The translations under genes were made by a program, and so were the position numbers. The notes below the pieces were generated by a model. It was given only the letters and a program-made list of their open reading frames with translations, had not been told where the DNA came from and made no database searches. This document shows positions 1 to 50,880 of a DNA stretch of 64,000 nucleotides, one piece after another; position 1 is the stretch's first letter; every line of letters begins with the position of its first letter. This stretch comes from Octopus bimaculoides (Eukaryota). The stretch spans positions 30,589,362-30,653,361 of the forward strand of contig NC_068984.1 of the NCBI RefSeq assembly GCF_001194135.2. Reading direction: 5' to 3'.

Positions 1-272
1 GAGATCGTTGCCAGTGCCCCTAGACTGGCCTGTGAGGGTGGCACATAAAAGACACCATTTCGAGCGTGGCCGTTTTCGTGCGGGTGACACGTAAAAGCAC
101 CCACTACACTCTCTGAGTGGTTGGCGTTAGGAAGGGCATCCAGCTGTAGAAACTCTGCCAAATTAGATTGGAGCCTGGTGTTGCCATCCGGTTTCACCAG
201 TCCTCAGTCAAATCGTCCAACCCATGCTAGCATGGAAAGCGGACGTTAAACGATGATGATGATGATGATGAT
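1..272 (+). mobile_element. RTE-clade LINE 3' UTR and (GAT)n tail (repeat family A)
   Basis: Near-identical to the sequence downstream of the RTE-like ORF end at 11928-12360 (…TTGGCGTTAGGAAGGGCATCCAGCTGTAGAAAC…CATGCTAGCATGGAAAGCGGACGTTAAAC) and ends in (GAT)n. Confidence 0.85.
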
Positions 273-8190: not shown

Positions 8191-8887
8191 GCAAGGAAAT
8201 ATGAAAATCCAAAAGTGAACTTTCGTTGATTTTGAACACAGAATTTTGAAGAGATGGAAGTCGTAATAAACAGCAGCAGTTACTGTATTCAGCATTCAAC
8301 CAATTCTACTATCAACTGCCCTTAAAAAGAATTCTATTAAATAATAAGGGAAATGTCTAAAATATGCACATTAAAATGAAAAGCAGCTTTAAATAAAAAA
8401 AAAAATAGTTCCTTCTGTTTTGAAGAGATTTGAAATTAAGTCTCAATATATCTATAAAAATTGAGCCTAATTAACATATCTTGTAAACAAGTTTGATAGC
8501 TTTCCTTCTTGTCCATTTCCTCCTCCTCCTCCTCCTCATCATCATCATCGTAGTCGTTGTCATCATCATCATCATCATCACCATCATCGTTGTCGTCGTC
8601 GTCGTCATCACTATTATCATTTACTTTTATTTCTTTTCTTTCTTCTTAATGCAAGCTTAATATATTTAATTATGCATAGAAATAGTTTGTATTGAATAGT
8701 GAAATCAATAGAATATGTAGACAATCATCATCAGTCGTCGTCCTGCTACAGCTGAAAGAGTTTTAAGAAAACCAAACGAAAACAAACAGAAGTAAAAAAA
8801 CGTTATCTTGGAAGGGAAATACTCAAACAGATACAACAGGTAACAACTGCAACATTACTGTTAACACTGATGTTGCTGCTGCCATCT

Positions 8888-8933
<46 letters not shown>

Positions 8934-9014
8934 AACTACTACTACTGCTACTGCCACTACTACTACTACTACTACCACTACTACTTCTACTACTACTACT
9001 GCTACTGCTGCTGT

Positions 9015-9057
<43 letters not shown>

Positions 9058-9059
9058 GC

Positions 9060-9144
<85 letters not shown>

Positions 9145-9290
9145 GCCACTACTACTACTACCACTACTACTACTACTGCTGCTACTACTACTACTGCTGC
9201 TGGTACCACCACCACCACTACTGCTGCTGGTGGTACCACTGCCACCACCACCACCACCACTACTACTAAAACTTCTGCAGCTGCTACTAC
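8888..9290. repeat. Compound trinucleotide tract (CTA/CTG/CCA)n
   Basis: About 400 bp of interleaved triplets, which produce the poly-L, poly-S and poly-V ORFs. Confidence 0.95.
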
Positions 9291-10024
9291 TCCTGCTTGT
9301 TGAAAAAAAGCAACTCAAGTTTTGTCATGTTCAAGAAGACTGATAACAAATTGTCACCCGATGAGGCATATAACTGATTTAATCATTCCAGTAAATTAGT
9401 TGCTGGTATCCTTGTAAACCCTAATTAATGAGAAACAAAAGTCTGACTCTGTTACGATAAGATTTCAGAATGTAGAGAAACAAAACTTTATAGTGGCTTC
9501 AATATTTTGGTACACGGCCAACAATTTCAAGGGAGAGACATAAGCAGGAAATTAAAAACCAAAATCTCTTAGGCTGATAGGCTAATAAGCATAAGGGCTA
9601 CAATTTGATTCCTTAACTGGGGCTGCATTATGTGTTTGACCAAAGCACATAGTTTTACATAATTCCAGTCTAGTCAGCTGGATTGGGTGCCAGCTCAATT
9701 CTGATGTAATCCTTTCTCTTACTGGCTGTCCCATTCTGAATGTGATCTATTGGTACAAGAGTGAGAGGGCCGAGATTATGCCTATGTCTTTTGGCAACTA
9801 CAAAGTTACTTAAAAGACTAAGCAAATGTGTGGTATATGCTACCAAGTAGTCCCCGATAAGGCGACACTGGCAGCGATCATGCTCAAATGGTGCTTTTCA
9901 CGAGTCACTGGCATGGGATCCAATCTGTGGCCCTGGCAACAATCACGCTCAGATGCACAAACATATATATGTATGCATGTAAGTATGTATGTATGTATGT
10001 ATGTATGTATATATGTATGTATGA

Positions 10025-11676: not shown

Positions 11677-12360
11677 AGCATCAGTTGTGGCGTGCAAGAG
11701 AGACGATTGCGCTGGTATGGACATGTGGTGAGAATGGAGGAGGATAGCTGCGTGAAAAAGTGCCACACCCTAACAGTTGAGGGAACCCGTGGAAGGGGTA
11801 GGCCCAGGAAGACCTGGGCTGAGGTGGTGAGGCAAGACCTTCGTACATTGGGCCTCACCGAGGCGATGACTACTGACCGAGACCTTTGGAAATGTGCTGT
11901 GCGTGAGAAGACCCGGCAAGCCAAGTAAGATCGTTGCCAGTGCCCCTGGACTGGCTTGTGNNNNNNNNNNNNNNNNNNNNNNNNNNNNNNNNNNNNNNNN
12001 NNNNNNNNNNNNNNNNNNNNNNNNNNNNNNNNNNNNNNNNNNNNNNNNNNNNNNNNNNNNNNNNNNNNNNNNNNNNNNNNNNNNNNNNNNNNNNNNNNNN
12101 NNNNNNNNNNNNNNNNNNNNNNNNNNNNNNNNNNNNNNNNNNNNNNNNNNNNNNNNNNNNNNNNNNNNNNNNNGACACGTAAAAGCACCCACTACACTCT
12201 CCGAGTGGTTGGCGTTAGGAAGGGCATCCAGCTGTAGAAACTCTGCCAAATCAGACTGGAGCCTGGTGTTGCCATCCGCTTTCACCAGTCCTCAGTCAAA
12301 TCGTCCAACCCATGCTAGCATGGAAAGCGGACGTTAAACGATGATGATGATGATGATGAT
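11677..12360 (+). mobile_element. 5'-truncated RTE LINE: ORF2 C-terminus, 3' UTR and (GAT)n tail (family A)
   Basis: Frame reads …CGVQERRLRWYGHVVRMEEDSCVKKCHTLTVEGTRGRGRPRKTWAEVVRQDL…KTRQAK* (stop 11926-11928). RLRWYGHV and RGRPRKTW are typical RTE ORF2 C-terminal motifs. The UTR is interrupted by a gap. Confidence 0.92.
11961..12173. other. Assembly gap inside the RTE 3' UTR
   Basis: N run. Confidence 0.99.
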
Positions 12361-12439: not shown

Positions 12440-12846
12440 CACACTTATCATTCAGCAAATGTGTCCCAGAAAGGTAATGTCATAGATGATTATGGATGAG
12501 ATTAAGTGAAGAACAATGAAATGTCTTAAGAATGTGAAAAAGAAAAGCTATTAGATAAACGTGCAATAAGTATTTAAATGAAGGTGAAAAGCAGTTATTC
12601 TAATGTATTACATTTGGAAACATTCCCAAGAGAAATTTAAGAAGAATACTTTTCTTACATGTTATTTGTTCTTTATTCAAGAATATGAACTACAAATAGT
12701 AATAGATACAAAAACAACATATTCAAAAACACTGTGTACAAACACACACACATGAACTTAAATGCATGGCAACTGAGCACTTATGACATTGCTTATAAAC
12801 AACATGTTCATGGACTAATATATATATATGTTTGTGTGTGTGTAAG

Positions 12847-12896
<50 letters not shown>

Positions 12897-13568
12897 CATT
12901 GACACACACACATACACATATACATATTAGATATACGATCTCTCTGTCTCTCTCTCTTGTTCTCTTTCTCTCTCTCTTGTTCTCTTTCTCTCTTTCTCCT
13001 TGTTTCTGTCATTTTTTTGTCATGTCCTCACCAGCTATTAAGCAGAAGTTTTATGTTAACCGTTCTTTCAATATCCATACATAACTTATTCAGCTTGTGG
13101 CAATATCAGATAATTTCAAAGATTATACATTTAGGATATTAATATGTATTATACACCTGTTGTTGGAGTCCACCAAGTAGCATTCAGAATGTCATAGATT
13201 TGTCATTTTTTCCCATGGTGGAAAATCATATACTGTAAGCAATAAACTAGTCTAAATAGCTATTTTAAAGATACATGTGTAAATGTGTGTATGTGTGTGT
13301 GTGTATATTCTCATTTTACATCTTTTTTTCCAATCCTTCCAAACCATCCTATTCAAGCCAGCATAAAAAAATGGACATAAAATGATGATATATACACTCA
13401 CACACATGTACGTAGAAACACACACACATTTACATATATACAAATACACACAAAAACATACATACACACACACACTCATATATATATTGTTAGAGGGAGA
13501 GATATCTTTTTTACATATATATATATATATGTGTGTGTGTGTGTATGTATATATATGTGTGTATATAT

Positions 13569-13599
<31 letters not shown>

Positions 13600-13704
13600 C
13601 ATATACATTCTTACATATGTAGCGATACATTACTACATATGTATAGATTAATACTTATTTCTGCTTCAGCAGTGTTTTGACCAACTTTCCCTGTTTAGTT
13701 AATG

Positions 13705-13816: not shown

Positions 13817-14206
13817 ACAAGATAGATGGTGAAACAGAGTGGAGAGAAAGAGATTCAACCCGAAATAATGCACTCCAGATTCCCTAAAGAGTTTGGAGAA
13901 TATCAAAAATAACAAGGTTTATGTAATGATGTATGAATAATGATCACTATCGCAAAATACAAAAATATCTCTCTGAAATTGGACAGAGGTTTTATTGTAT
14001 ATATTTTTTTCCTCTCAGACATGCTATCACATGTAAATATCAGTTTCAAAATTCACTTGCCAAAATAAAATACGTATGCATACATGTGTGTGTGTGTGTA
14101 TATGTGTGAATGTATCTGTGTATGTATGAGTATACGTGCGTGCATATACATATGTATATATGTATATATGAATATATGTATATATATATATGAATATATG
14201 TATGTA

Positions 14207-14273
<67 letters not shown>

Positions 14274-14964
14274 GTACACACACATGCATACACACACCAC
14301 ATGTATGAGTGTACATATAAATATATTATAAAGAAGAGGTAAAAGTATCTACAAGTTTGTAAGTTAGCAAAAATATAGTGAGTATTTTAATCCCAGAAGT
14401 AAAAAAAAAAATCTCATTTATTTTCATCTAAACCTTATTGATATCATTTCAACAGTTCATATTTTTGTTACAAAATTTAAAAAAGTCCTATATGTGTATA
14501 TATACATTCTAACATATATTCATACATATGTGTGTGTGCATGTGTTAGAGTTTTGTTATTTATCTGATTTCTGTCATTGCGCTGTGGTTATGCTGGTGTA
14601 CTGTCTTCAAATTTCTTAGTTGATCATATGCAACTGAGTACTGATTTCAGATTGGTACTGATTTTATTGATTTGAATTTACAGACTCTATAAGTTGTGGG
14701 ATATAGGGAAATGCAGACATAAAAGATAGCAAGATAATGGACTTATTGCTATCGATGCAGTTATTTACTTACATATATATCATCATCATAATTTTTATTA
14801 AAACAATCATGTTTCCATGCTAGCATGTATCAAATGAAGTTTATTGAAGTAAATTTTGTACAGCTGGAAGCTCTTCCTGTTGCCAACACATACTTGTTCC
14901 TGATCAATGTAATGTTTCTCTAGTTATTCAAACATGAGCAACACAATAGGCAGATATATTTTCT

Positions 14965-19928: not shown

Positions 19929-20089
19929 TCATCATCATCATCATCATCGTTTAACGTCCGCTTTCCATGCTAGCATGGGTTGACTGAGGACTGGTGGACC
20001 AGATGGCTACACCAGGCTCCAATCTGATTTGGCAGAGTTTCTACAGCTGGATGCCCTTCCTAACACCAACCACTCTGAAAGTGTAGTGG
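19929..20089 (-). mobile_element. Family A (RTE) 3' tail
   Basis: (CAT)n followed by the reverse complement of the family A terminal sequence. Confidence 0.85.
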
Positions 20090-22029: not shown

Positions 22030-22875
22030 CATCATCATTTAACGTCTGGCATGGGTTGGACAGTTTAACTGAGCTGGCACACTGAAAGGCTGCACTAGAC
22101 TCCAGTTTGATTTGGCATGGTTTTCTATAGCTAGATGCCCTTCCTAACGCCAACCACTCTCAGACTGTAATGGGTGCTTTTACGTGCCACCAGCACGGGT
22201 GCCATATGTGTGCCACCAACATCTGTCATGACTGCAAATTTGCTCGGCTTGATGAGTCTTCTTCTCAAGAATGACATAATGCTAAAAGTCTCGGTCATTG
22301 CCTCCATGAAGCCCAACACTTGAAAGAAACTCAACCACTTTGCCTCCATGATGCCCAATGCTCAAAAGCTATTCTTTATGTGCCACCAGCAAGAGTGCCA
22401 GTTTCCACAACTATGATTTCACTTGGCTTGACAGGTGCTCTCAAGCACAGCGTATTGCCAACGGTCTTGGTCACTAGTCATTGCCTCTGTGAGGCTCAAA
22501 GTCCAAAGCTCATGCTTCACCACCTCATCCTATGTCTTCCTGGGTCTACTTCTTATTTCTATACTGTCCACAAGGGGCTACGCACAGAGGGGACAAACAA
22601 GGACAGAAAAATGGATTAAGTCGATTATATCGACTCCAGTGTGTAACTGGTACTTATTTAATTGACCCCAAACGGATGAAAGGCAAAGTCGACCTCGACG
22701 GAATTTGAACTCAGGATGTAACGGCAGATGAAATACCGCTAAGCATTTCGTACGGAGTGCTAATGTTTCTGCCAGCTTGCCTGTCTACTTCTACCACAAG
22801 TTCCCTCCACAGTTAGAGTTCGGCACTTCTTTACACAGCTGTCCTCATCCCATATGCATCACCTGACCATATCAT
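22030..22875 (-). mobile_element. Degraded family A RTE 3' region with a repeated ORF2 end, interrupted by a SINE
   Basis: Tail and UTR at 22030-22210. Two segments are homologous to the RTE ORF end (~22215-22330 and ~22400-22553), and the ORF homology continues at 22783-22875. Confidence 0.7.
22554..22782 (-). mobile_element. Family B SINE inserted in the RTE remnant
   Basis: Flanked by the 10-bp duplication GTCTACTTCT (22544-22553 and 22783-22792). Confidence 0.85.
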
Positions 22876-33784: not shown

Positions 33785-34293
33785 TGTTGTCGCTTGCAAA
33801 GACTTGTTGAGGCAAGTGAAATCGAAATCAAACTAAATTCGATGACTGGCACCTATGCCAACGTCGTCTCCTTCATTGGACACGAAACTCAGCTTGCGAA
33901 GACTTATTGGGGCAAGCGAAATCGCGATAGCACCTGTGCCCAGTGTCGCCTTTCTGGCACTTGTGCCCGTGACATGTGTAAGGAGTTTCGGGCAAGATCG
34001 TTGCCAGTGCCCCTGGACTGGCTCTTGTATGGGTGGCACATAAAATACACCATTTTGAGCATGGCCGTTGCCAGTACCACCTGACTGGCCTTCATGCCAG
34101 TGGCACGTAAAAGCGCCCACTACACTCTCTGAGTGGTTGGCGTTAGGAAGGCCATCCAGCTGTAGAAACTCTGCCAAATCAGATTGGAGTCTGGTGTAGC
34201 CTTCGGGCTCCACCAGTCCTCTGTCAAATCGTCCAACCCATGCTAGCATGGAAAGCAGACGTTAAACGACGACGACGACGACGATGATGATGA
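33785..34293 (+). mobile_element. Family A 3' end with a non-RTE-ORF upstream segment (probable non-autonomous derivative)
   Basis: 33985-34293 matches the family A UTR and tail, but upstream it lacks the ORF2 C-terminus seen at 11677-11928. Confidence 0.7.
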
Positions 34294-34839: not shown

Positions 34840-35007
34840 CTCAACTCAGAGTGGTTGGCGTTAGGAAGGGCATCCAGCTGTAGAAACTCAGCCAGATCAG
34901 ATTGGAACCTGGTGCAGCCATCTGGTTCACCAGCCCTCAGTAAAATCGTCCAACCCATGCTAGCATGGAAAGCGGACGTTAAACGATGATAATGATGATG
35001 ATGATGA

Positions 35008-35055: not shown

Positions 35056-35270
35056 TTGTATCTGTGTTTGCCCTTTCCCCCACAGTCACTTGATAACAAA
35101 TGTTGGTTTGTTTACGTCCCCATAACTTAGAGATTCGGCAATAAAGAAGACCAATAGAATAAGTACAAAGAATAAGTCCTGTTGTTGAGTTCTTTGAGTA
35201 AAGCCTTTTAAGGTAGTGCTCCAGCATGGCCACAGTCAACTGACTGGACCTATTAAAAAGAATGAAAAGA
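35045..35270 (+). mobile_element. Family C SINE 3' body
   Basis: TTGGTTTGTTTACGTCCCCATAACTTAG…TAGAATAAGTAC…GTGCTCCAGCATGGCCACAGTC. Confidence 0.7.
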
Positions 35271-35324
35271 ATAAAAAGAAAAAGTATAGTCTGTAAGTAT
35301 TGTCTGAGTACTTGCAATAGAGTG

Positions 35325-35585
35325 AATTCTGCTAAAGGCACCTCAAGGCTGACTGAATTTGAACTCAGAACACAAAGACCTAAAACAAACACCACCAGAC
35401 ATTCAGTTGGATGTTTGCAATATTCCACCAACCTGCCATGTTGGATTGGTACTTTTTCAACACTGAGAGGCCGAAAGGTTGACCTTGATGGATTTGAACT
35501 GAGAGAATAGAGAGCTGAAACAAAGAGCTGAAACAAAGAGCTTGAAGAATTTCGTCCAATTATCTTACCACTCTGCCAGTTTGCT
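35325..35585 (-). mobile_element. Degraded family B SINE fragments
   Basis: GAATTTGAACTCAGAA and GATTTGAACTGAGA (reverse B-box region) and ACCACTCTGCCAGTTTGC. Confidence 0.5.
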
Positions 35586-37034
35586 ACTTCAAACTAAAAG
35601 TAATCAAAAGATATAATTTCTAAATAAATGCAACAATACTTAAATAACAGCTATTTGTCATTAAATATGAAAAATAATAATATTCCAGTATCAGTTTAAC
35701 AAGTAAGAATTACTCATATTTACAGAGCAAACTGAAAAATTGTAGTTATTTAGAAGCATATTTTTCCAAAGCAGCATTCTTCAATTAGTTTGAAAACCAT
35801 TTTGTATCAGACACTAAATCATGTTGTACTGGTATAGAGATTCCAAGTGACATCCAGATAAAGTTAATTCTTGGTAATTGTGTTGCTCGTGTGAACATGT
35901 TGTTTCTTATCACAAGTTACATATATTTCCTCACATAACTGTATGTCTTTGATCTAGCAAATGGATCAAGGAATATGAAAGTCAGTCAGGTTAACCTATA
36001 AGAATAAATTCATGCATAGAATGTTCACAGAATTCAACAACGGTATTAGTATAAAGCCAATTTGAAAAGATGTAATATCAGAGATGCAACGTGGATTGCA
36101 TCTAAAGCCTGTGACTGGGTTGATAAAGTAGAATGATAGATAATCTATTGATAGCATGCTTATTCAATAATATGATGATAATGATGATGGTGATTGTAAC
36201 TTTAGTGGTGGTGGTGGTGGTGGTGATGGTGATGATAGAGAGCAGGGATTGAAGATAGCCACATCAATACTGATTTAACACCAAAGTCAACAAAATGCCA
36301 TATCCATTATTGATGGTGATGATGACTGATGATGGCAATGACGATGATGATTATGAATATGATGATGATTAAGATGATGATGATGGCAACTCCGTAGTTG
36401 TTGCTGCCAAAGCCACAATGCCAAAAGTGACAATATTGATGATGATGATTATAACAGTGGTTGTGGTGCTGGTGGGGGAGGTAGAGGAGGAGAAGGAGAA
36501 AATGGAAGATAAACCTGATATCAATTGAAGAAAATTGTTAATGACATTCACTAAAGGGTTTTCAGGCCTTATAGATCAGCAGTTGACGATAGCTATAGTA
36601 AAAAGATATTAAGATATTCATAAGGATTCTCCATTTAACCTCCAAGGTTATTTGTCACTTTGCAACGAATGGAACTGAAGACAATAAAAATTTAAATAAT
36701 GATATTGATGATGATGATGATGATGACAAAAATGAAGTGAAGTCAGATCTGTATAGAAGACAAGTATTTTTACCGAAAACTGAAGCAAAATTCATTTTGT
36801 GAAGTTTGCGTATGTTTTATGAATAAAACGCACACACAAATACATAAATGATCTCATATATTTATACTTTAACCTGATGGTGCTTTGTTTTACTTGGAAG
36901 CAATGCTACTGCATTGCAATACTTATTAAGTTTTTCTTTGAAAACGTCTTCACTGTTCTCAGTCTGTTAACAGCCAGGCATTCAGACAAGTATACTGGCA
37001 ATGATGTGGCAACATTCAAAATGATGTCTAGGTG

Positions 37035-37110
37035 AATCTAGCTGAAGAGAACTAATCAAATTTATGTTAACAAACCTAATTTGCAAAGTTCGAAACCTAG
37101 GTCCTAGATT
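37035..37110 (+). ncRNA. Type I hammerhead ribozyme (canonical core, palindromic stem III)
   Basis: Stem I AATCTAG(37035-41)/CTAGATT(37104-10); core CTGAAGA (37042-48); stem II GAAC/GTTC (37049-52/37088-91) extended by CAAATT/AATTTG; GAAA (37092-95); stem III ACCTAGGT; GUC cleavage triplet at 37101-37103. Confidence 0.88.
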
Positions 37111-37112
37111 AT

Positions 37113-37158
<46 letters not shown>

Positions 37159-37344
37159 NNNNNNNNNNNNNNNNNNNNNNNNNNNNNNNNNNNNNNNNNN
37201 NNNNNNNNNNNNNNNNNNNNNNNNNNNNNNNNNNNNNNNNNNNNNNNNNNNNNNNNNNNNNNNNNNNNNNNNNNNNNNNNNNNNNNNNNNNNNNNNNNNN
37301 NNNNNNNNNNNNNNNNNNNNNNNNNNNNNNNNNNNNNNNNNNNN
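37159..37344. other. Assembly gap after (CA)n
   Basis: N run. Confidence 0.99.
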
Positions 37345-37419
37345 TAAATGGAGACGAACATCATTCCTTCCTGTGATCAGCTTGGAAAAATAGTTAAGAT
37401 ATTAAGATATTGTTCTTAT

Positions 37420-38601
37420 ATGTAAAAATATCTTGAAATACTCAAGTGTAAACTTATTCAATAAAATCGGCATTGGCTTCAACCATAGCCTCCAGACAAC
37501 TTCAGAATCTCCTGCAACCCTCCTTGACAGTCTCCTTGTTTAAGTTGGTGAACGCTGCCATAATCCTTGCCTTCAGTTCATCTTTGGTGTTGGTCTCTTG
37601 CTCAACTGCATCCCACACATAATAATCAAAGGAGTTGCAGTCTGGGGAGTTAGGTGGACAGATGTTAGGGGTGATGTGGTCGCAGAAATTGTCTGACAGA
37701 CATGACTAGGTTCTCTCCTGCTTGTGCTGCATGATGCAGAGTCCTGTTGCCAGACATAGGGTTTTCTAGCAGCCACCCTCTTGACCCAGGCACTAGATTC
37801 AGGCCTCTGTGTTGAGTGTGAGGTCGTGTGGGAAGATGAATGTTGGTATAATGGCACCGTCACTAGTGATCACTCCAAACACCATGATGTTGACTGGATG
37901 TTTGATTTTTATCATTCTTGGTACATGTTTTGGAGACATGGCAAGCCTTAGATTGTTCTGTGTGTTCACCTTCTGATCCTAGCAGAAATTTTTCTCGTTT
38001 AAGAAAAAACCAAAGCATGTTCGGTTGGAGGGATGCTTGAGTTTGTTCAAAAGGTTCGTAGCACAGTCTTGCCTCTTGTCCTTGATGGCTTCGGATAAAA
38101 ATTAGCCCCTTCTCATCTTGTGTGAGGAATATTGAATGTTTTTATGCACTACCTTCCTGATAAGAAATTCAGACACTCTCATGTCCCTGGTGATGGACCA
38201 GACTGACTTGGAGAGATCATTGTCAATTATGGCCTGGATCTCACCAACAAATTTAGGAGTCCTTTTCTTATCAGAACAATCAGAGTGAGTTTTCCAAGCC
38301 GCCGTACCTCTGTAATCACCATTAGACTCATCCAATTCTTTCTGAATCCTCTGCACTGTCCTCAGATTGACACTCAAACACTGTGAAATGTTCGTATTGG
38401 ATCTTCCAGTGCAAATGCCAAGCAGTACAGCATGCCATTTCAAAATTTCTGGCTGAGTGAATTGTGTCATGGTGCTGTTTTTCTCACAGATAGTATCCAA
38501 CTTACCCTACATATACTGTGTAATTGATAGAATCAAAAGCAAACAATGCACATGCACGAAATTGAAAATATAAAATGGTGACAATTTACCCATCACGCCT
38601 A
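37420..38601 (-). mobile_element. DD37D (maT-type) Tc1/mariner transposon with a disrupted transposase (38470 to 37454)
   Basis: MTQFTQPEILKWHAVLLG…NLRTVQRIQKEL…IMVFGVITSDG…YVWQQDSA…PPNSPDCNSFDYYVW, with stops and frameshifts. Combining it with the 47072 copy gives 37 residues between the QQD and FDY aspartates. A TA-flanked terminus lies at ~38600. Confidence 0.88.
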
Positions 38602-41700: not shown

Positions 41701-44242
41701 AAGTGATAACTTTTGAATGGCAGTATAAAATGAAAGCTGGAATCAGTAGTTTTATCCTCCATGGACACTAGGATAGAAAATATACTTCTATTTCAGTAAA
41801 ATAACAGTATCCCGTCATGACCAATTTAACTTAAACTAGTAAAAGATCTTTAAAATATGTTATACTTCTGTAAAATTTTTCCTTTTGTACCTAAAATAGC
41901 TGCAGTTACTTGGGGAAAAATTTTGAAACATTTAGAGAGAAATGAAGTGCATATATTTTGATAAATATGCACTGTGAACTAGTTAGATGATATATTTCAG
42001 AAAATGCTATGAGTGAGTGGATATTGTGGAATAGATTACAGCAAGTAATTGAAAAATTAGTATGGACACATTGTAAAAATAGAGGATTTGCAATGGTAAA
42101 TTTGAGTGGTCAGAAAAGGGATAGGAAAAAACGAAAATGATTCATAAGACCAGATTATATACTACAGCTTATAAGTGTATGCAAGACTCAAAACCAGTAA
42201 GAGAGTTTCTACACAGTCATTTGGCTGCAATAACAAGTAGCTAAGTTTCCCTTAAACCATACCCTACTATCTTGAAGAAAAGCTGAAGTTGATACATTAT
42301 TCCTGAAAATAAAATGGATTTGGATGCTTTGAGTATAGATCTGGGTTAAACAATAGCAGGTGCAGTAAGATGAATAACAATAATCAACAAATATTTGATA
42401 TTAGACTCATAAAATATAGATTAACAATGAAAATTGTGCTATAATTATCATGATTGAAAAACCTCGGCCAGCATTATTTGAAAAACTCTAAGGTAGGAGG
42501 TAACCAATGGGATGCTTTGGAATATTCTATCTATGCTACACTTTGGTTATACAATTGATTTAATTGTGTATGAGACCACTAAGTAATGTTTTCTATGTCA
42601 GATATAGCATGATAGTAAGGAAATGTTTCATACATCTATGTATTATCCAAATCAGAGAAGAGTAAAGTGAATAATGTTACTCATTAATACTTCAAATCTC
42701 TAGATTCTACTGTGTTTGTCAAACCAGCATATCAACCAGAGAAAAAGTCTAAATATGAGGAAACTGGTGAATGTCTATTGCTAACAAGTAGTCCATAGAA
42801 TAACTTATATGAAGCTTTATAAGTTAAATTGCCACAAAGAGTGAAGAATATCACAGCATTTCAGGGTTATTGTAGCTATGTATATTCATATTACTTTGAT
42901 ACATATATTTTAATATAGTTTTATGTTTATCTTGGTCACATAAAAAAAAAATAGTCTATTTAAAATGGTGTCATGAGCATAATCTCAATGTACTCTATTA
43001 TTAATATGCCTAGATGTTAGCAGAAGGTTGAATATTTAATTACTGAATAAACTTTGGTTTTTAAATATCTAAAGTGATTTTGACAATCTCTTTTGGCATT
43101 TAGACAGTGTTTGTATAATGATTCTGCATTTCATGATGTAGATTTGTTAGGGATCTTCTGTGTAGGTGATCAATTTACTTACTGCTACTATGAAACCTAT
43201 TTAAAAACACATTGGACTCTTAAACATTGCAACAGTTTAGGGTAAGAGCAGATTTTGAGCCATACACTTAAAACACAGATTTAGCCATAAACAGAATGTT
43301 GAATGATGACTGCCTAATAGATGTTGTGTGTATGTGCATGTGTGTGTTTAGGTTAATCAGAGAATGAGCATAGCCATCATTTGTTTCTGACTCTCAGAGT
43401 ACTGTAGGTTAATGTAAGGCAGCAAATGTATAACTGAGAAGTGAATTCCTGTGAAGATGCAATTAGGAAAAAGAAATGGTTGGTCAACATCTTTGGAACA
43501 GAGTCTAGGAAAATGAGACAATGATGGTAGCAAGAGAAATGTAGGTATCTGGTAAGACAAGGCGGTCAGGTTAGGAAGCTATCCAATTCTGAAAACCAAA
43601 ATTAATGTAAAATAAATAGAAGAGACACAAAAAAGAACAAATATATGTGCGAACCAATGGCTGAAGCATTCTGATGAGTGAGATTTTATGGTCTAGAATG
43701 CATTATAATTCGAGATATGTGGACAATACTTGAATGATTGCTTGTAGAGAGTCAGCACCTGTTCAAGCTTGAAGTATTTTCTGGACTTAAAGGATGAAAA
43801 TTTTATTCTTATTTCATATAAGGTCATCATTGAGATAATCTAATATTGAAAGGCAAAAGTATTAGGAATGCCATTGCAAAATTCATGTTTATTTATTTAT
43901 TTATTTATGTGTTTCAGCCAAGTGGCTGCGGTCATGCTGGTGCACCTACTGGGAATTTAAATTTGTTCATTACCAAAAACAAGAAATAGCATTGAAAAAT
44001 TATGTTACTGAAGTGAAATCTTTCCCAGCACTTCGTATTATTAACATTGTTAGAACTTATGTACAGGCATGGCTGTGTGGTTAAGAAGCTCACTTTACAA
44101 ATGCATGATTTCAGAATCAGTCACACCAGGGTGACATATGGGGCAAATATCGTTCTGTTATTGTTAGAATTTATGTGTGTGTGTGTGTGTACGTGTGTGT
44201 GTGTGTGTGTGTGTACATATTCATACATACATACATACATAG

Positions 44243-45267
44243 TATCACTCAGGCAGCACCTGCTAAACAACAACAGCAAAAATAAATATATGAGTGCTGT
44301 GCTAAAAAGTGAAGTGAGCAACATTGTATGAGTTGGCAGTGAGCTCCTCAAAAAGCACTCTCTTCCTGATGATCTCCTATACATCCTCCAAACAACTGGG
44401 CTCTCTTACTTCAGAGAAGATCTGGATGGAAAGTACTCAGCATACAAAAAAAACAAAACAAAAAAAAACTATGCATGAGTATGCTGCCCGGAAGCTTGAA
44501 GAAGACAGCAAAATTGACACGAAGCACAGCCATTCTTGGACACAAGACCACTACATAATATCATACTTTGAGGGCTATGCGACTGCAATCCAGGAACAGG
44601 AAATTGCCACAAATTATCTGGTGAAAAAGAGAGAGACAGTCACACTCTTGTAATCCCAAGGTGCAACTGCATGTATAGGTTATGTCATGTTTCTGTGGAA
44701 GACATCGTGCATGTGATTAGCAGCTGTCCTAAAATGTCATCATGGCACTACCTCCCTATGCGGCACAATGTTGTTGCTAAAACAATTTACAATGCCATCC
44801 GCAAAAAAAGACTGCCCTGAAATAAACTTAGAAAATCCCTCTGTTATGGAGTTATGTAATACATTCGTAAACACCAACTCAAGGAATGCTGATGGAATAT
44901 TCCCATCAAACCTTCTTTGAAATGTAAATATAAGAGGCTAAATATTGTTGCTTGGGACAGAGGAGCAAAGATATGCACCATCATAGCAGTCAACTGCCCC
45001 GCAGATATAAATATCTCATTGAAAATCTAAGAAAAAGAGGATATCTATGGACAACTGCTTCAAAACCTCCAGCTTCTATATCCAGACTATGAATTCATAT
45101 TCATACCAATTATAATTGGAGTACTAGGTTTTGTTAGTAAATGCTTAAAGGAGAATGTGGATAAACTGGGATTTCCAGAAAGAGAAATTGACTGGTTAAT
45201 TCGTACATTACAAGTGCAATCTGTGAGTAGAACACTAAAAGTTTGCAAGACTTTTCTCAAGTTCTAA
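44243..45267 (+). pseudogene. R4/Dong-like non-LTR retrotransposon 3' fragment (zinc knuckle and restriction-like endonuclease)
   Basis: EGYATAIQEQEIATNY…RLCHVSVEDIVHVISSC…RHNVVAKTIYNAI…RLNIVAWD…CTIIAVNCPADINI…LLYPDYEFIFIPIIIGVLG…VCKTFLKF*. This is a CCHC-like knuckle, RH motif and degenerate PD-(D/E) region, with stops. Confidence 0.8.
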
Positions 45268-46360: not shown

Positions 46361-47071
46361 ATCTGGCTATTTGATGTTACTACTCTTTAACTCCAGGCAG
46401 AGCCTCTACCAGCTGGTTATCAGTGCAATCTGCACCTGGTATATATTGCAAGCAAGGGGGTGAACCCCTACTATCTTCTATAAAATGATGGCATCACCAA
46501 ACTGAATGGTTTTGGGTTATTAGTACCGATCTTCAATGGTGAACATCCAACCACTAGAGATGGCAGGAATTCACTCCAGTTTGCACTATTTAGAAAACGA
46601 AGTGATAATCAGTCACTGAACTTGCAACAAACAAGGTAGTTAGTTAGAAAATAAGATATGAAAGTAATTAAAGTTTGGTCAAAGTTGTTCCAACGACTTC
46701 TAGTTTATTAATCAATTTTTACATTTGGTTAATCTGTTTACATTGCACCTCACTTGGATCCTAAAAAAGGACTTATGGCTATTTAGCCTGGCTTTGTAGG
46801 GGCTCACTATTGCTCTAATATATTACTTTGCAAGCATCCCTTCATCTTAGATACCACCACCTATAGTCCATGACCTCAGTTTTACATCAGTCATTCACTG
46901 GGCACTCATTGTTAATTCTATATGTGCATCTTGCCTCTGCACAAGGTTTTGGGGCGTTCACTAATATCTACTTGACATAGGCACACTACTGGATGAAACC
47001 CTTAAGTTATGTCTGTTGATTAAACTCCTATATCTATGAGACTGTGTGAAATGGTAATCTAGTGATCTAAG

Positions 47072-47713
47072 GTTTGTTGTGTCCCCAAAACATTTACCAC
47101 GAGTGATAAAAATCAAACATTCAGTCAACATCATGGTGTTAGGAGAGATCATTAGTGATGGCGACATTATGCCTCCATTCATCTTCCCACACAACCTCAT
47201 ATTCAACATGGAGGCCTACATCAAGTGCCTGGAGGAAGCAGTGCTGCCTTGGGTCAAAAGGGTGGCTACTGGAAAACCCTATTTCTGGCAACAGGATTCT
47301 GCACCATGCCACACAAGCAGGAGAACCCAGTCATGGCTGTCAGACAATTTCTGCAACTACATCATACTTAACATCTCGCCACCTAACGCCCCAAACTGCA
47401 ATGCACTTCGTTAAGTGTCAGGTACAGTTGAGTGAGAGACCAACGAAACTCCTTGTAGCACCAAAGATGAACTGAAGACGAGGATTATGGGAGCATTCAC
47501 CAACTTAAACAAGGAGACCATCCAGAAGAGTCACAGGAGATTTCGAAGTTGTTTGGAGGCCATGGTTGAAGCCAATGGCAATTTTATTGAATAAATTTAC
47601 TGTTTAGTATTTCAAGATATTTTATGTAATTTTGCTAAATACATCTGTTAAAATGAGATGACAGTGTCATTTCCATTTTTGCATAATTTAGACAATAGTT
47701 TATTCACCATACC

Positions 47714-47749: not shown

Positions 47750-47889
47750 GTAAAAGCACCCACTACACTCTCTGAGTGGTTGGCGTTAGGAAGGGCATCC
47801 AGCTGTAGAAACTCTGCCAAATCAGACTGGAGCCTGGTGTTGCCATCCGCTTTCACCAGTCCTCAGTCAAATCGTCCAACCCATGCTAG
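47748..47889 (+). mobile_element. Family A terminal fragment, nearly identical to 12180-12320
   Basis: Direct comparison shows about one difference. It is bounded by (TA)n and an N-gap. Confidence 0.8.
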
Positions 47890-49709: not shown

Positions 49710-50880
49710 TTTCTGTATGAGTCAGAGCTCCAGCAGCAGAGGCATAAGGTCAGTCCAAACAGCCTTTGAATGTCACATTATATCAATCAGACAACATCTG
49801 CTGAACAGTAAAGACAGATGTGAGCATATTCCATGCATACTCAAAAGTGTAGGCAACAACATCTTCAGAGCTGGAGAACTACGATACTGTTACTCTGAGA
49901 ATACAATTGTCTCATGCAACCCAAAAGAGGCTGGACAGGCCTACCTAAATAGAAGCTTGAAAGGGCAGCAGGCATCATACCAACAAAAAGCAATGCATAG
50001 GTACATATCTTGTAAGCTCCAGGGCAACAACAGCATTGACAGGAAGAGTAACCTCTTCTGGATCTGCAATAGATACATTATATCCCACCTAGAAGGATAT
50101 GCCTTTGCTATCTAGGAATAGGAAATAGCTACTAAATACTTGATAAACAAAAGGGACAAAGGTACCAGCAAACCGCCATGTTGTGATAAGAAATATCAGC
50201 TCTGCTATACCAATGAATAAGATATCACCCACGTCATCAGCAGCTGCCCCAGAATGTCTATGAGATACAACCTGTCTTTGAGGCATGATATAGTTGCAAA
50301 GACTATTTACAATACTATTCACTAGAAGGAATGCCCTGATGTATGCATAAAAGACATGTCAGAACCAGCAGGTATTCACACCTTCAAATAGGAATACTGG
50401 TGGAACACCTCAATCATCATCATCATCGTTTAATGTCCGCTTTCCATGCTGCATGGGTTCGAGGATTTGACTGAGGACTGGTGAACCAGATGGCTACACC
50501 AGGCTCCAATCTGATTTGGCAGAGTTTCTACATCTGGATGCCCTTCCTAACACCAACCACTCTGAGAGTGTAGTGGGTGCTTTTATGTGCCACCGGCACG
50601 AAGGCCAGTCAGGCAGTACTGGCAATAGCGATGCTCAAAATGGTTTATTTTACGTGCCACCTGCACAGGAGCCAGTCCAGTGGTACTGGCAATGACCTAG
50701 CTCGAATGTCTTTTCATGTGCCGCCAGCACAAGTGCCAGGAAGGCGACACTGGCAACGATCACGCTCAAATGGTGGTCAAAAAATTTCAATTTGGTGCAA
50801 ACATAACAGAACTGATAGTGTTCTGTTAGACAGGGAACTAAAGTCAATGTACTGTTGCAGAGGTCAGTTGCCCAGCAAAT
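49710..50880 (+). pseudogene. Second R4/Dong-like fragment, split by a family A insertion
   Basis: SIRQHLLN…LEGYAFAI*E*EIATKYL…DITHVISSCPRM…RHDIVAKTIYN…EYWWNTSI, then after the insertion KISIWCKHNRTDSVLLDR (HNRPD-like). Homologous to 44243-45267. Confidence 0.75.
50414..50778 (-). mobile_element. Family A RTE 3' UTR and tail nested in the R4/Dong-like fragment
   Basis: (CAT)n plus the reverse complement of the family A end and three ~65-bp UTR modules. Confidence 0.85.

What the first reader, a model, noticed from the sequence alone, without database searches (positions are those of the whole stretch)
37035..37110. Fully canonical hammerhead ribozyme with a palindromic stem III
Seen: all conserved core positions are present (CUGAAGA, G10.1-C11.1, GAAA, GUC), with a 7-bp stem I, a 4-bp stem II extended by a second helix, and stem III ACCUAGGU. 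Established: a 2-nt loop is too tight for a monomer, but palindromic stem IIIs allow dimeric cleavage in Penelope-type hammerheads. The predicted cut is after 37103. The motif lies outside any element I recognise, so it may mark an unannotated retroelement end or cut a host transcript.
Basis: partly seen in the sequence, partly recalled or inferred. Interest (0 to 1): 0.85.

Follow-up and report, generated by a model that had tools for sequence, protein, structure and literature searches.

The report
Solitary type I hammerhead ribozyme motif
A complete hammerhead self-cleaving RNA motif of the ordinary animal, dimer-prone kind sits alone in repeat-rich, gene-poor DNA; it is most likely a stray copy left by a small ribozyme-carrying retroelement, so it is genuine but not unusual.

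Summary
At 37035-37110 (+) every hammerhead core position is canonical. Helix I has 7 bp, helix II has 5 bp plus a 33-nt extension, and helix III is the palindrome ACCUAGGU. Cleavage is predicted after C17 (37103). A local Rfam scan scores it as Hammerhead_1 at 38.0 bits (gathering 34, E 5e-8). A descriptor as strict as the observed motif matched 0 of 300 shuffled windows. Two whole-window Rfam scans missed it, probably because of the helix II insert.

Folding supports the dimer idea. The monomer's best fold sequesters the core, with helix III probability about 0.01. Two copies fold best as a double hammerhead sharing an 8-bp helix III (-44.4 against 2 x -16.8 kcal/mol).

It is the only hammerhead in the 64 kb. 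It has no tandem or dispersed copy, and I found no reverse transcriptase or GIY-YIG trace nearby. A (CA)22 tract, a 186-N gap and a decayed mariner follow it.

The best reading is a solo copy from the retrozyme / Penelope-like lineage, probably weakly active or inactive. Genome copy number could not be measured: no searchable collection appears to hold the source genome.

It is a new member of a known kind, of low to moderate interest.

The parts
37031..37034 (+). Distal part of helix I, 5' side: GG (37031-37032) predicted to pair with CC (37113-37114), followed by the UG half of a 2x2 internal loop. This loop is a possible 'loop 1'.
   Evidence: RNAfold structures. Inference only.
37035..37041 (+). 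Helix I, 5' strand, AATCTAG.
   Evidence: 7 Watson-Crick pairs with 37104-37110.
37042..37048 (+). Catalytic core C3 U4 G5 A6 A7 G8 A9 (CTGAAGA).
   Evidence: aligned to the RF00163 consensus CUGAnGA.
37049..37053 (+). Helix II, 5' strand, GAACT. G10.1 is 37049.
   Evidence: 5 bp with 37087-37091.
37054..37086 (+). A 33-nt extension of helix II: 3x3 internal loop (AAU/CAA), 6-bp helix 37057-37062/37078-37083, and a 15-nt tip. This is atypical for animal type I hammerheads, which usually have a 4-bp helix II with a 6-nt loop.
   Evidence: treated as an insertion by the Rfam model.
37087..37091 (+). Helix II, 3' strand, AGTTC. C11.1 is 37091.
37092..37094 (+). Catalytic core G12 A13 A14.
37095..37102 (+). 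Helix III, palindrome ACCTAGGT (A15.1 to U16.1). It can form a 2-bp stem with a CUAG loop in a monomer, or an 8-bp intermolecular helix in a dimer.
   Evidence: dimer minimum-free-energy fold; duplex energy -12.8 kcal/mol.
37103..37103 (+). C17. The predicted self-cleavage is 3' of this base (37103/37104).
   Evidence: Position in the hammerhead consensus. Cleavage itself was not tested.
37104..37110 (+). Helix I, 3' strand, CTAGATT.
37114..37158 (.). (CA)22 microsatellite beginning 10 nt after the cleavage site. It may be the insertion target or the element boundary.
   Evidence: Tandem Repeats Finder. Penelope-like-element insertion bias for microsatellites is described in PMC8557442. The link to this locus is inference.
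37159..37344 (.). Assembly gap of 186 N. It hides whatever follows the hammerhead, and a second tandem copy cannot be excluded.

Best explanation
This is a genuine type I hammerhead ribozyme motif of the canonical animal class. That class comprises the newt, Schistosoma and cricket satellite hammerheads and the non-LTR retrozymes.

Here it is present as a single ('monomer') copy, most likely left by a small non-autonomous retroelement of the retrozyme / Penelope-like-element lineage. It lies in non-coding, repeat-rich DNA of an animal genome.

Proposed mechanism (inferred, not shown):
1. When the + strand is transcribed, helices I and II form locally.
2. Helix III is too weak in a single copy, and the core is predicted to be trapped in an extended helix I.
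3. Two copies of the RNA pair through the self-complementary ACCUAGGU. This gives an 8-bp helix III shared by two catalytic cores (a 'double hammerhead').
4. Each core then cleaves after C17 (37103), leaving a 2',3'-cyclic phosphate and a 5'-OH.
5. In active retrozymes, tandem copies supply the partner in cis. The excised unit is then circularised and reverse-transcribed by a Penelope-like-element enzyme.

This copy has no visible partner in cis. It is therefore probably a dead-end insertion that cleaves poorly, if at all.
For: Shown:
- The core and helices are all canonical.
- RF00163 scores 38.0 bits against a gathering score of 34, E 5.3e-8.
- It is the only hammerhead in 64 kb.
- The strict descriptor matched 0 of 300 shuffles.
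- The monomer's best fold (-16.8 kcal/mol) is not the hammerhead fold. The hammerhead-competent monomer fold is -14.5 kcal/mol. In the ensemble, helix III has probability about 0.01 and C3 is paired 0.885 of the time.
- The dimer's best fold is the double hammerhead at -44.4 kcal/mol, against -33.6 for two monomers.
- The local DNA has 33% GC.
- No protein-coding gene signal was found anywhere in the window apart from transposase fragments.

From the literature:
- Most animal type I hammerheads have a short helix III with a small palindromic loop and are selected to act as dimers (PMC4209133).
- Most lie in low-GC non-LTR retrozymes (PMC7229834).
- Monomeric derivatives are common and evenly dispersed, and retrozymes are related to Penelope-like-element terminal repeats (bioRxiv 10.64898/2026.07.22.740005).
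- Penelope-like elements show an insertion bias for microsatellites, including (CA)n in one clade (Chlamys) (PMC8557442). This fits the (CA)22 tract 10 nt after the cut site.
Against: - No second copy, tandem or dispersed, exists in the window.
- No reverse transcriptase or GIY-YIG trace was found within about 6 kb at the sensitive setting (segments of 30 aa or more), or anywhere in the window for segments of 55 aa or more.
- The 354 nt ending at the motif are not unusually self-paired (z = -0.95), unlike retrozyme circular RNAs. The unit boundaries are unknown, however.
- The long helix II extension, the 7-bp helix I and the 5-bp helix II differ from the usual 6-bp/4-bp architecture with conserved loop contacts.
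- Genome-wide copy number could not be measured. No collection I could search appears to hold the source genome.
- Every core base and every stem pair is intact. This could equally mean a recent insertion or selective constraint.
Confidence: 0.62

Rival explanations
1. The motif is the visible edge of a tandem retrozyme or satellite array, or of a longer Penelope-like-element terminal repeat. The rest was collapsed into the 186-N assembly gap. On this reading it has a partner in cis and may be an active, circular-RNA-producing locus.
For: - The gap begins 55 nt after the cleavage site, directly after a (CA)22 tract.
- Tandem and complex repeat insertions commonly break short-read assemblies (PMC8557442).
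- The motif is perfectly intact.
Against: - There is no upstream unit. Smith-Waterman alignment of the motif plus flank against 36400-36999 scores 39, against a shuffle mean of 32.8 +/- 4.8, and 39 of 300 shuffles score as well.
- The sequence after the gap is a decayed mariner on the other strand, with no similarity to 36400-37113.
- If the stated gap size of 186 nt is right, it leaves room for at most one short unit.
Confidence: 0.13
2. It is a single-copy hammerhead retained by the host. It would process a host RNA such as an intron, a long non-coding RNA or a 3' UTR, in the manner of the conserved amniote intronic hammerheads (HH9/HH10) or the CLEC2 3'-UTR hammerhead.
For: - It is solitary, with no recognisable element around it.
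- All catalytic and pairing positions are intact, although the adjacent mariner is heavily decayed.
Against: - No exon or protein-domain signal was found anywhere in the 64 kb other than transposase fragments.
- A dimer-dependent helix III suits a cis-acting single-copy processing site poorly.
- Rfam's clan competition assigns it to Hammerhead_1, not HH9/HH10.
- Isolated type I motifs in animals are usually retroelement-derived.
Confidence: 0.1
3. It is a chance resemblance with no ribozyme ancestry.
For: - The DNA is AT-rich and of low complexity, and the hit is solitary.
- The whole-window Rfam scans did not report it.
- The 86-nt fold is only mildly better than shuffles (z = -1.84).
Against: - It scores 38 bits, above the curated threshold, with E 5.3e-8 for 1.3 kb across 4227 families. 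My own scaling of that value gives about 5e-5 expected hits for this one family across a genome of about 2.7 Gb.
- 0 of 300 shuffles reach the observed stem lengths.
- The 8-nt palindromic helix III and the G10.1-C11.1 pair are family hallmarks.
Confidence: 0.04

Closest known systems
Canonical animal type I hammerheads (Rfam RF00163: newt satellite 2, Schistosoma Sm-alpha, cave-cricket pDo500)
   Same: - Type I topology and an identical catalytic core.
- The G10.1-C11.1 pair.
- An 8-nt self-complementary A15.1-U16.1 segment: ACCUAGGU here, ACGCGCGU in the Rfam consensus.
- It scores above the family's gathering threshold.
- It is predicted to be dimer-dependent.
   Different: - Helix II is 5 bp and continues through an internal loop into a further 6-bp helix (33 extra nt). 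The usual form is 4 bp capped by a 6-nt loop.
- Helix I is 7 bp before its internal loop, not 6.
- The conserved loop 1 / loop 2 contact nucleotides are not recognisable.
- It is solitary here, not in a satellite.
Non-LTR retrozymes of animals (Cervera & de la Pena 2020, PMC7229834; Li et al. 2026 preprint)
   Same: - They carry this kind of hammerhead.
- They have low GC (33% here against under 45%).
- They lie in intergenic, repeat-rich settings.
- Dispersed 'monomer' derivatives are described.
   Different: - The defining tandem repeat of 150-450 bp is not seen in the readable sequence.
- The flank is not unusually self-paired.
- Copy number and circular-RNA expression are unknown.
Hammerheads in the terminal repeats of Penelope-like elements (Cervera & de la Pena 2014, PMC4209133)
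   Same: - Dimer logic and palindromic 15.2-16.2 positions.
- Many occur as isolated motifs from truncated elements.
- Variants with a small palindromic helix III exist in flies, rotifers and shrimps.
- Penelope-like elements favour microsatellite targets.
   Different: - No reverse transcriptase / GIY-YIG reading frame or second terminal repeat lies nearby.
- The mini-hammerhead hallmarks are absent: no extra nucleotide between A9 and G10.1, a helix III is present, and helix I is 7 bp rather than 4-5 bp.
Conserved host hammerheads of amniotes (HH9, HH10; CLEC2 3'-UTR)
   Same: They are single-copy type I motifs outside obvious mobile elements.
   Different: - They are described as isolated motifs rather than tandem copies.
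- From my own knowledge, not tested here, they are conserved at orthologous positions inside genes and do not depend on a partner copy.
- Here helix III is dimer-type, no gene is detectable, and conservation could not be tested.

Membership tests
Hammerhead ribozyme, type I (Rfam RF00163) | Conserved catalytic core: C3 U4 G5 A6 N7 G8 A9, G12 A13 A14, the A15.1-U16.1 pair, and H17 (not G) | tested here: met
   CTGAAGA at 37042-37048, GAA at 37092-37094, A37095-T37102 and C37103.
Hammerhead ribozyme, type I (Rfam RF00163) | Three helices around the core, with helix I open-ended and the G10.1-C11.1 pair present | tested here: met
   Helix I has 7 bp, helix II has 5 bp including G37049-C37091, and helix III is hairpin-closed and palindromic.
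Hammerhead ribozyme, type I (Rfam RF00163) | Covariance-model score at or above the curated gathering score | tested here: met
   38.0 bits against 34, over the full model, in the local scan. It was not reported by the whole-window scans, which I attribute to filter loss.
Hammerhead ribozyme, type I (Rfam RF00163) | Loop 1 / loop 2 tertiary contacts (helix I of 6 bp, helix II of 4 bp, conserved loop nucleotides) | tested here: inconclusive
   Internal loops exist at comparable positions: 2x2 after 7 bp of helix I and 3x3 after 5 bp of helix II. The conserved loop sequences described in PMC4209133 and PMC7229834 are not evident.
Hammerhead ribozyme, type I (Rfam RF00163) | Mg2+-dependent site-specific self-cleavage 3' of position 17 | not testable with these tools
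   This requires in vitro transcription of monomer and dimer constructs.
Non-LTR retrozyme | Hammerhead-bearing unit repeated head to tail (about 150-450 bp units) | tested here: not met
   No tandem or dispersed copy appears in the readable sequence. The 186-N gap at 37159-37344 leaves one downstream unit untestable.
Non-LTR retrozyme | Low GC content (under 45%) | tested here: met
   GC is 33.1% for 36760-37113 and 31.6% for the motif. The whole window is 33.9%, so this test does not discriminate.
Non-LTR retrozyme | Unit RNA is highly self-paired | tested here: inconclusive
   For 36760-37113, z = -0.95 against shuffles. The unit boundaries are unknown.
Non-LTR retrozyme | Multi-copy family in the genome, expressed as small circular RNAs | not testable with these tools
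   No searchable collection appears to hold the source genome or its transcriptome.
Penelope-like element (terminal repeat) | Reverse transcriptase plus GIY-YIG endonuclease reading frame flanked by direct repeats that carry the hammerhead | tested here: not met
   Pfam gave no RVT or GIY-YIG hit in any stop-free segment of 55 aa or more across the window, or of 30 aa or more in 31.0-41.5 kb. A heavily decayed frame could still escape detection.
Penelope-like element (terminal repeat) | Mini-hammerhead architecture: no helix III, an extra nucleotide between A9 and G10.1, helix II of 7-8 bp, helix I of 4-5 bp | tested here: not met
   A9 is directly followed by G10.1, helix III is present, and helix I has 7 bp (compared with the description).
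Penelope-like element (terminal repeat) | Insertion into microsatellite targets | tested here: inconclusive
   (CA)22 starts 10 nt after the cleavage site. However, microsatellites are very frequent throughout this window.
Conserved host hammerhead (HH9/HH10-like) | Located inside a host gene and conserved at the orthologous position across species | not testable with these tools
   No gene signal was found in the window, and no related genomes were available. Rfam's clan competition chose Hammerhead_1.

The most novel reading that the evidence does not exclude
The most novel reading my evidence does not exclude has two forms.

Either the motif is the founding example of an undescribed retrozyme family with a long, two-part helix II. 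The host lineage looks, from composition and repeats recalled from memory only, like a cephalopod, and I found no hammerhead retrozymes reported for cephalopods.

Or it is a single-copy hammerhead retained by the host to process a non-coding or intronic RNA through intermolecular dimerisation.
Probability: 0.12. Interest if true: 0.5.

Novelty: new member of a known kind. Interest (0 to 1): 0.27.

Why it matters
Type I hammerheads with a short palindromic helix III occur by the thousands in animal genomes. They are already tied to retrozymes and Penelope-like elements, so one more copy changes little.

Its modest value lies in three points:
- It is a clean, fully intact example with an unusually long helix II. 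If it is active, it would show how much peripheral variation this class tolerates.
- If related copies exist in the source genome, it would flag a retrozyme family in a lineage where I found none described.
- It is a practical warning. Standard Infernal filters on long sequences miss hammerheads that carry large helix inserts.

Tried and rejected
**Rfam scans.** Whole-window scans in gathering mode and E-value mode gave no hammerhead. All other sub-threshold hits were microsatellite artefacts such as mir-297 and mir-466.

**First regex.** The pattern missed the motif because helix II spans 43 nt, more than the 38 nt I allowed.

**Copies within the window.**
- BLAST of 36401-37158 and of 35100-37113 returned only microsatellite or low-complexity matches.
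- Tandem Repeats Finder and the repeat finder found nothing relevant.
- Smith-Waterman alignment for a decayed upstream unit was not significant.

**Search for a Penelope-like-element frame.** Pfam scans of 367 stop-free segments found only transposase HTH domains (HTH_23, HTH_48) and a few marginal, unrelated families, none of them reverse transcriptase or GIY-YIG.

**Relatives elsewhere.**
- A pattern scan of JGI metagenomes gave 5 hits, none with hammerhead pairing.
- Scans of prokaryotic genome contigs and viral contigs gave 0 hits.
- A chimeric six-frame peptide query of 36795-37116 against the 5.8-billion-protein collection gave 0 hits. This is uninformative, because the source genome seems absent from that collection: the best hits to the window's mariner frame were only 45-76% identical.

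**ENA assembly ERZ21867824.** Loci fetched from it through mariner homologues come from a different species. The two scanned (L001, L007; L008 was not available to the script) lack the window's abundant SINE and contain no hammerhead.

**Pol III-driven SINE idea (Sm-alpha-like).** A B-box-like AGTTCGAAACC lies inside the motif. There is no convincing A box and no tRNA-like structure.

**Literature and supplement searches** for the exact sequence returned only unrelated primers.

Full report
**1. Observation**

The sequence at 37035-37110 (+) is AATCTAG-CTGAAGA-GAACT-[33 nt]-AGTTC-GAA-ACCTAGGT-C-CTAGATT. Mapped to hammerhead numbering:

| Element | Coordinates | Note |
|---|---|---|
| Helix I | 37035-41 / 37104-10 | 7 Watson-Crick pairs |
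| C3-A9 | 37042-48 | CTGAAGA |
| G10.1-C11.1 | 37049 / 37091 | plus four further pairs (37050-53 / 37087-90) |
| G12 A13 A14 | 37092-94 | |
| A15.1 to U16.1 | 37095-37102 | palindrome ACCTAGGT |
| C17 | 37103 | predicted cut 37103/37104 |

The 33 nt inside helix II form a 3x3 internal loop, a 6-bp helix (37057-62 / 37078-83) and a 15-nt tip.

**2. More than chance?**

- A local Rfam scan of 36500-37160 reports RF00163 Hammerhead_1 at 38.0 bits (gathering 34). E is 5.3e-8, over the whole model, with all core columns matching.
- That E-value covers 1.3 kb on both strands against 4227 families. By my own arithmetic, scaling it to one family and a genome of a few gigabases still gives far fewer than one expected hit.
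- My own pairing-aware descriptor found exactly this one motif in the 64 kb on both strands.
- In 300 dinucleotide-preserving shuffles of the window, a loose version gave 0.15 hits per window. A version as strict as the observed stems gave none.
- Two whole-window Rfam scans did not list the motif. The bit score is above threshold, so I attribute this to the speed filters, which are stricter on longer input, acting on a model interrupted by a 33-nt insert. This is an inference, but it matters for anyone relying on default scans.

**3. Folding**

As a monomer:
- The 86-nt RNA's best fold (-16.8 kcal/mol) is not a hammerhead. Helix I is extended by pairing core nucleotides with part of the helix III segment.
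- Forcing the hammerhead helices gives -14.5 kcal/mol, with helix III reduced to 2 bp and a CUAG loop.
- In the ensemble, the helix III pairs have probability about 0.01 and C3 is paired 0.885 of the time.

As a dimer:
- Two copies co-fold best into the classic double hammerhead. Both sets of helices I and II are intact, and one 8-bp intermolecular helix III forms at -44.4 kcal/mol. Two monomers give -33.6.
- The isolated helix III duplex is worth -12.8 kcal/mol.

These energies ignore tertiary contacts, so they show propensity rather than activity.

**4. Context**

- The window is eukaryotic, with 33.9% GC, eight N gaps and very many microsatellites.
- It carries at least 13 copies of one SINE-like repeat at 79-92% identity, and decayed mariner-like transposase fragments.
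- Pfam scans of 245 stop-free segments of 55 aa or more across the whole window found nothing beyond transposase HTH domains and a few marginal, unrelated families. Scans of 122 segments of 30-54 aa in 31.0-41.5 kb did no better.
- In particular there was no reverse transcriptase and no GIY-YIG nuclease. No host gene is detectable, though short exons without domains would escape this test.
- Ten nucleotides after the cleavage site a (CA)22 tract begins (37114-37158). It is followed by a 186-N gap (37159-37344) and then the 3' part of a decayed mariner on the minus strand (37345-38500).
- Nothing in 35100-37113 is repeated elsewhere in the window apart from low-complexity sequence.
- There is no decayed upstream unit.
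- The 354 nt ending at the motif are not unusually structured (z = -0.95).

**5. Relatives elsewhere**

None could be found, but the searchable collections are poorly suited to the question.

- A pattern scan of JGI metagenome contigs returned five matches. On inspection none has hammerhead pairing or similarity.
- Prokaryotic genome contigs and viral contigs returned nothing.
- As a proxy for a DNA search, I queried the large protein collection with concatenated six-frame peptides of 36795-37116. There were no hits.
- This negative result is uninformative. The window's own mariner frame found only 45-76% identical proteins, all from one ENA assembly.
- That assembly is another species. The two of its loci that I could scan lack the window's SINE, share only the mariner, and hold no hammerhead. 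The source genome therefore seems absent from the collection.
- Copy number, the single most useful fact, remains unknown.

**6. Comparison with what is known**

- Cervera and de la Pena (PMC4209133) describe 'canonical' animal type I hammerheads. These have helix I of 6 bp, helix II of 4 bp, and helix III with a 1-2 bp stem and a small palindromic loop. They are inefficient alone and active as dimers.
- The same authors contrast these with the Penelope-like-element 'mini-hammerheads'. Those have no helix III, an extra nucleotide between A9 and G10.1, a long helix II and a short helix I.
- The present motif has the canonical core and helix III, so it belongs with the former. Its helix II is atypically long and two-part.
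- The authors also note Penelope-like-element variants with a small palindromic helix III, and that most motifs occur singly, probably from truncated elements.
- PMC7229834 places most canonical type I hammerheads in low-GC tandem non-LTR retrozymes. It notes that a 2-bp/tetraloop helix III is typical of invertebrate motifs, and that an axolotl motif of that form showed 22% monomeric self-cleavage in 1 h.
- A 2026 preprint reports dispersed monomer derivatives and sequence kinship between retrozymes and Penelope-like-element terminal repeats.
- PMC8557442 reports Penelope-like-element insertion bias for microsatellites.
- PMC11167929 shows that hammerhead cleavage is not required for Penelope-like-element insertion in vitro.

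**7. Interpretation**

- The best-supported reading (about 0.6) is a solo copy from the retrozyme / Penelope-like-element lineage. It is structurally intact but lacks a partner in cis.
- The main alternative (about 0.13) is that the partner copies are hidden in the assembly gap.
- An exapted host ribozyme (about 0.1) cannot be excluded, because intactness next to a badly decayed mariner could reflect constraint. It could equally reflect youth.
- Chance is very unlikely (about 0.04).
The motif and the dimer logic are sound. The 'monomer impossible' and 'Penelope-type' statements are too strong. The functional suggestions remain open.

**8. Verdict**

This is a real but ordinary feature: a new member of a known kind with a somewhat unusual helix II. 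Interest is low to moderate. The organism was not identified. The composition and the SINE sequence reminded me of octopod genomes, but that is recollection, not a test (a literature search for the sequence found nothing).

Noticed in passing
window 112-257, 12200-12345, 19943-20078(-), 22046-22160(-), 34128-34272, 34846-34990, 47771-47889, 50422-50565(-) and others: An abundant SINE-like repeat has at least 13 copies in 64 kb, at 79-92% identity to the 34846-34990 copy. Its 3' end runs into a (GAT)n tract. It is absent from the related-mariner loci of ENA assembly ERZ21867824. ARAGORN finds no tRNA-like structure in the window.
   Followed up: partly
window 37345-38500 (-) and 47058-47472 (+): Decayed mariner/Tc1-like transposase fragments carry stops and frameshifts, with an N-terminal HTH_23. 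Their homologues are 45-76% identical, all from one ENA assembly. A further Mos1-type HTH_48 hit lies somewhere in 1-21 kb or 53-64 kb and was not localised.
   Followed up: partly
window 37036-37109: Default Infernal filters on the whole 64 kb miss this hammerhead in both gathering and E-value modes. A 661-nt local scan scores it above threshold. The 33-nt helix II insert is the probable cause. Other insert-bearing ribozymes could be missed in the same way in long-sequence scans.
   Followed up: yes
window 37087-37097: The helix II 3' strand, the GAAA and the start of helix III together read AGTTCGAAACC. This is one mismatch from the Pol III B-box consensus GGTTCGANNCC. No convincing A box lies upstream (best candidates have 3 mismatches). 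It is probably coincidental.
   Followed up: partly
window 37026-37041 against 37096-37110: A CTAG-rich segment just upstream of helix I (GTCTAGGTGAATCTAG) can pair with the helix III / cleavage-site region. It takes part in the alternative, non-hammerhead best fold of the longer transcript.
   Followed up: no
window 13450-13610, 12810-12940, 14120-14300, 44169-44255 and others: Numerous sub-threshold Rfam hits to mir-297, mir-466, mir-3149 and mir-1277 sit on (CA/TG)- and (TA)-rich microsatellites. These are low-complexity artefacts, all far below gathering scores.
   Followed up: yes
window 8803-9343: A long trinucleotide (AGC/CTG-type) repeat tract gives poly-Ser, poly-Leu and poly-Val 'reading frames' of 145-171 aa on both strands. 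There is no evidence that it is coding.
   Followed up: no
L008 11674-18474 (ENA ERZ21867824 ctg123217l): The neighbouring called genes carry RVT_1, Integrase_H2C2 and rve domains. This is an LTR-retrotransposon-like element next to the mariner homologue in the other species, unrelated to the finding.
   Followed up: no
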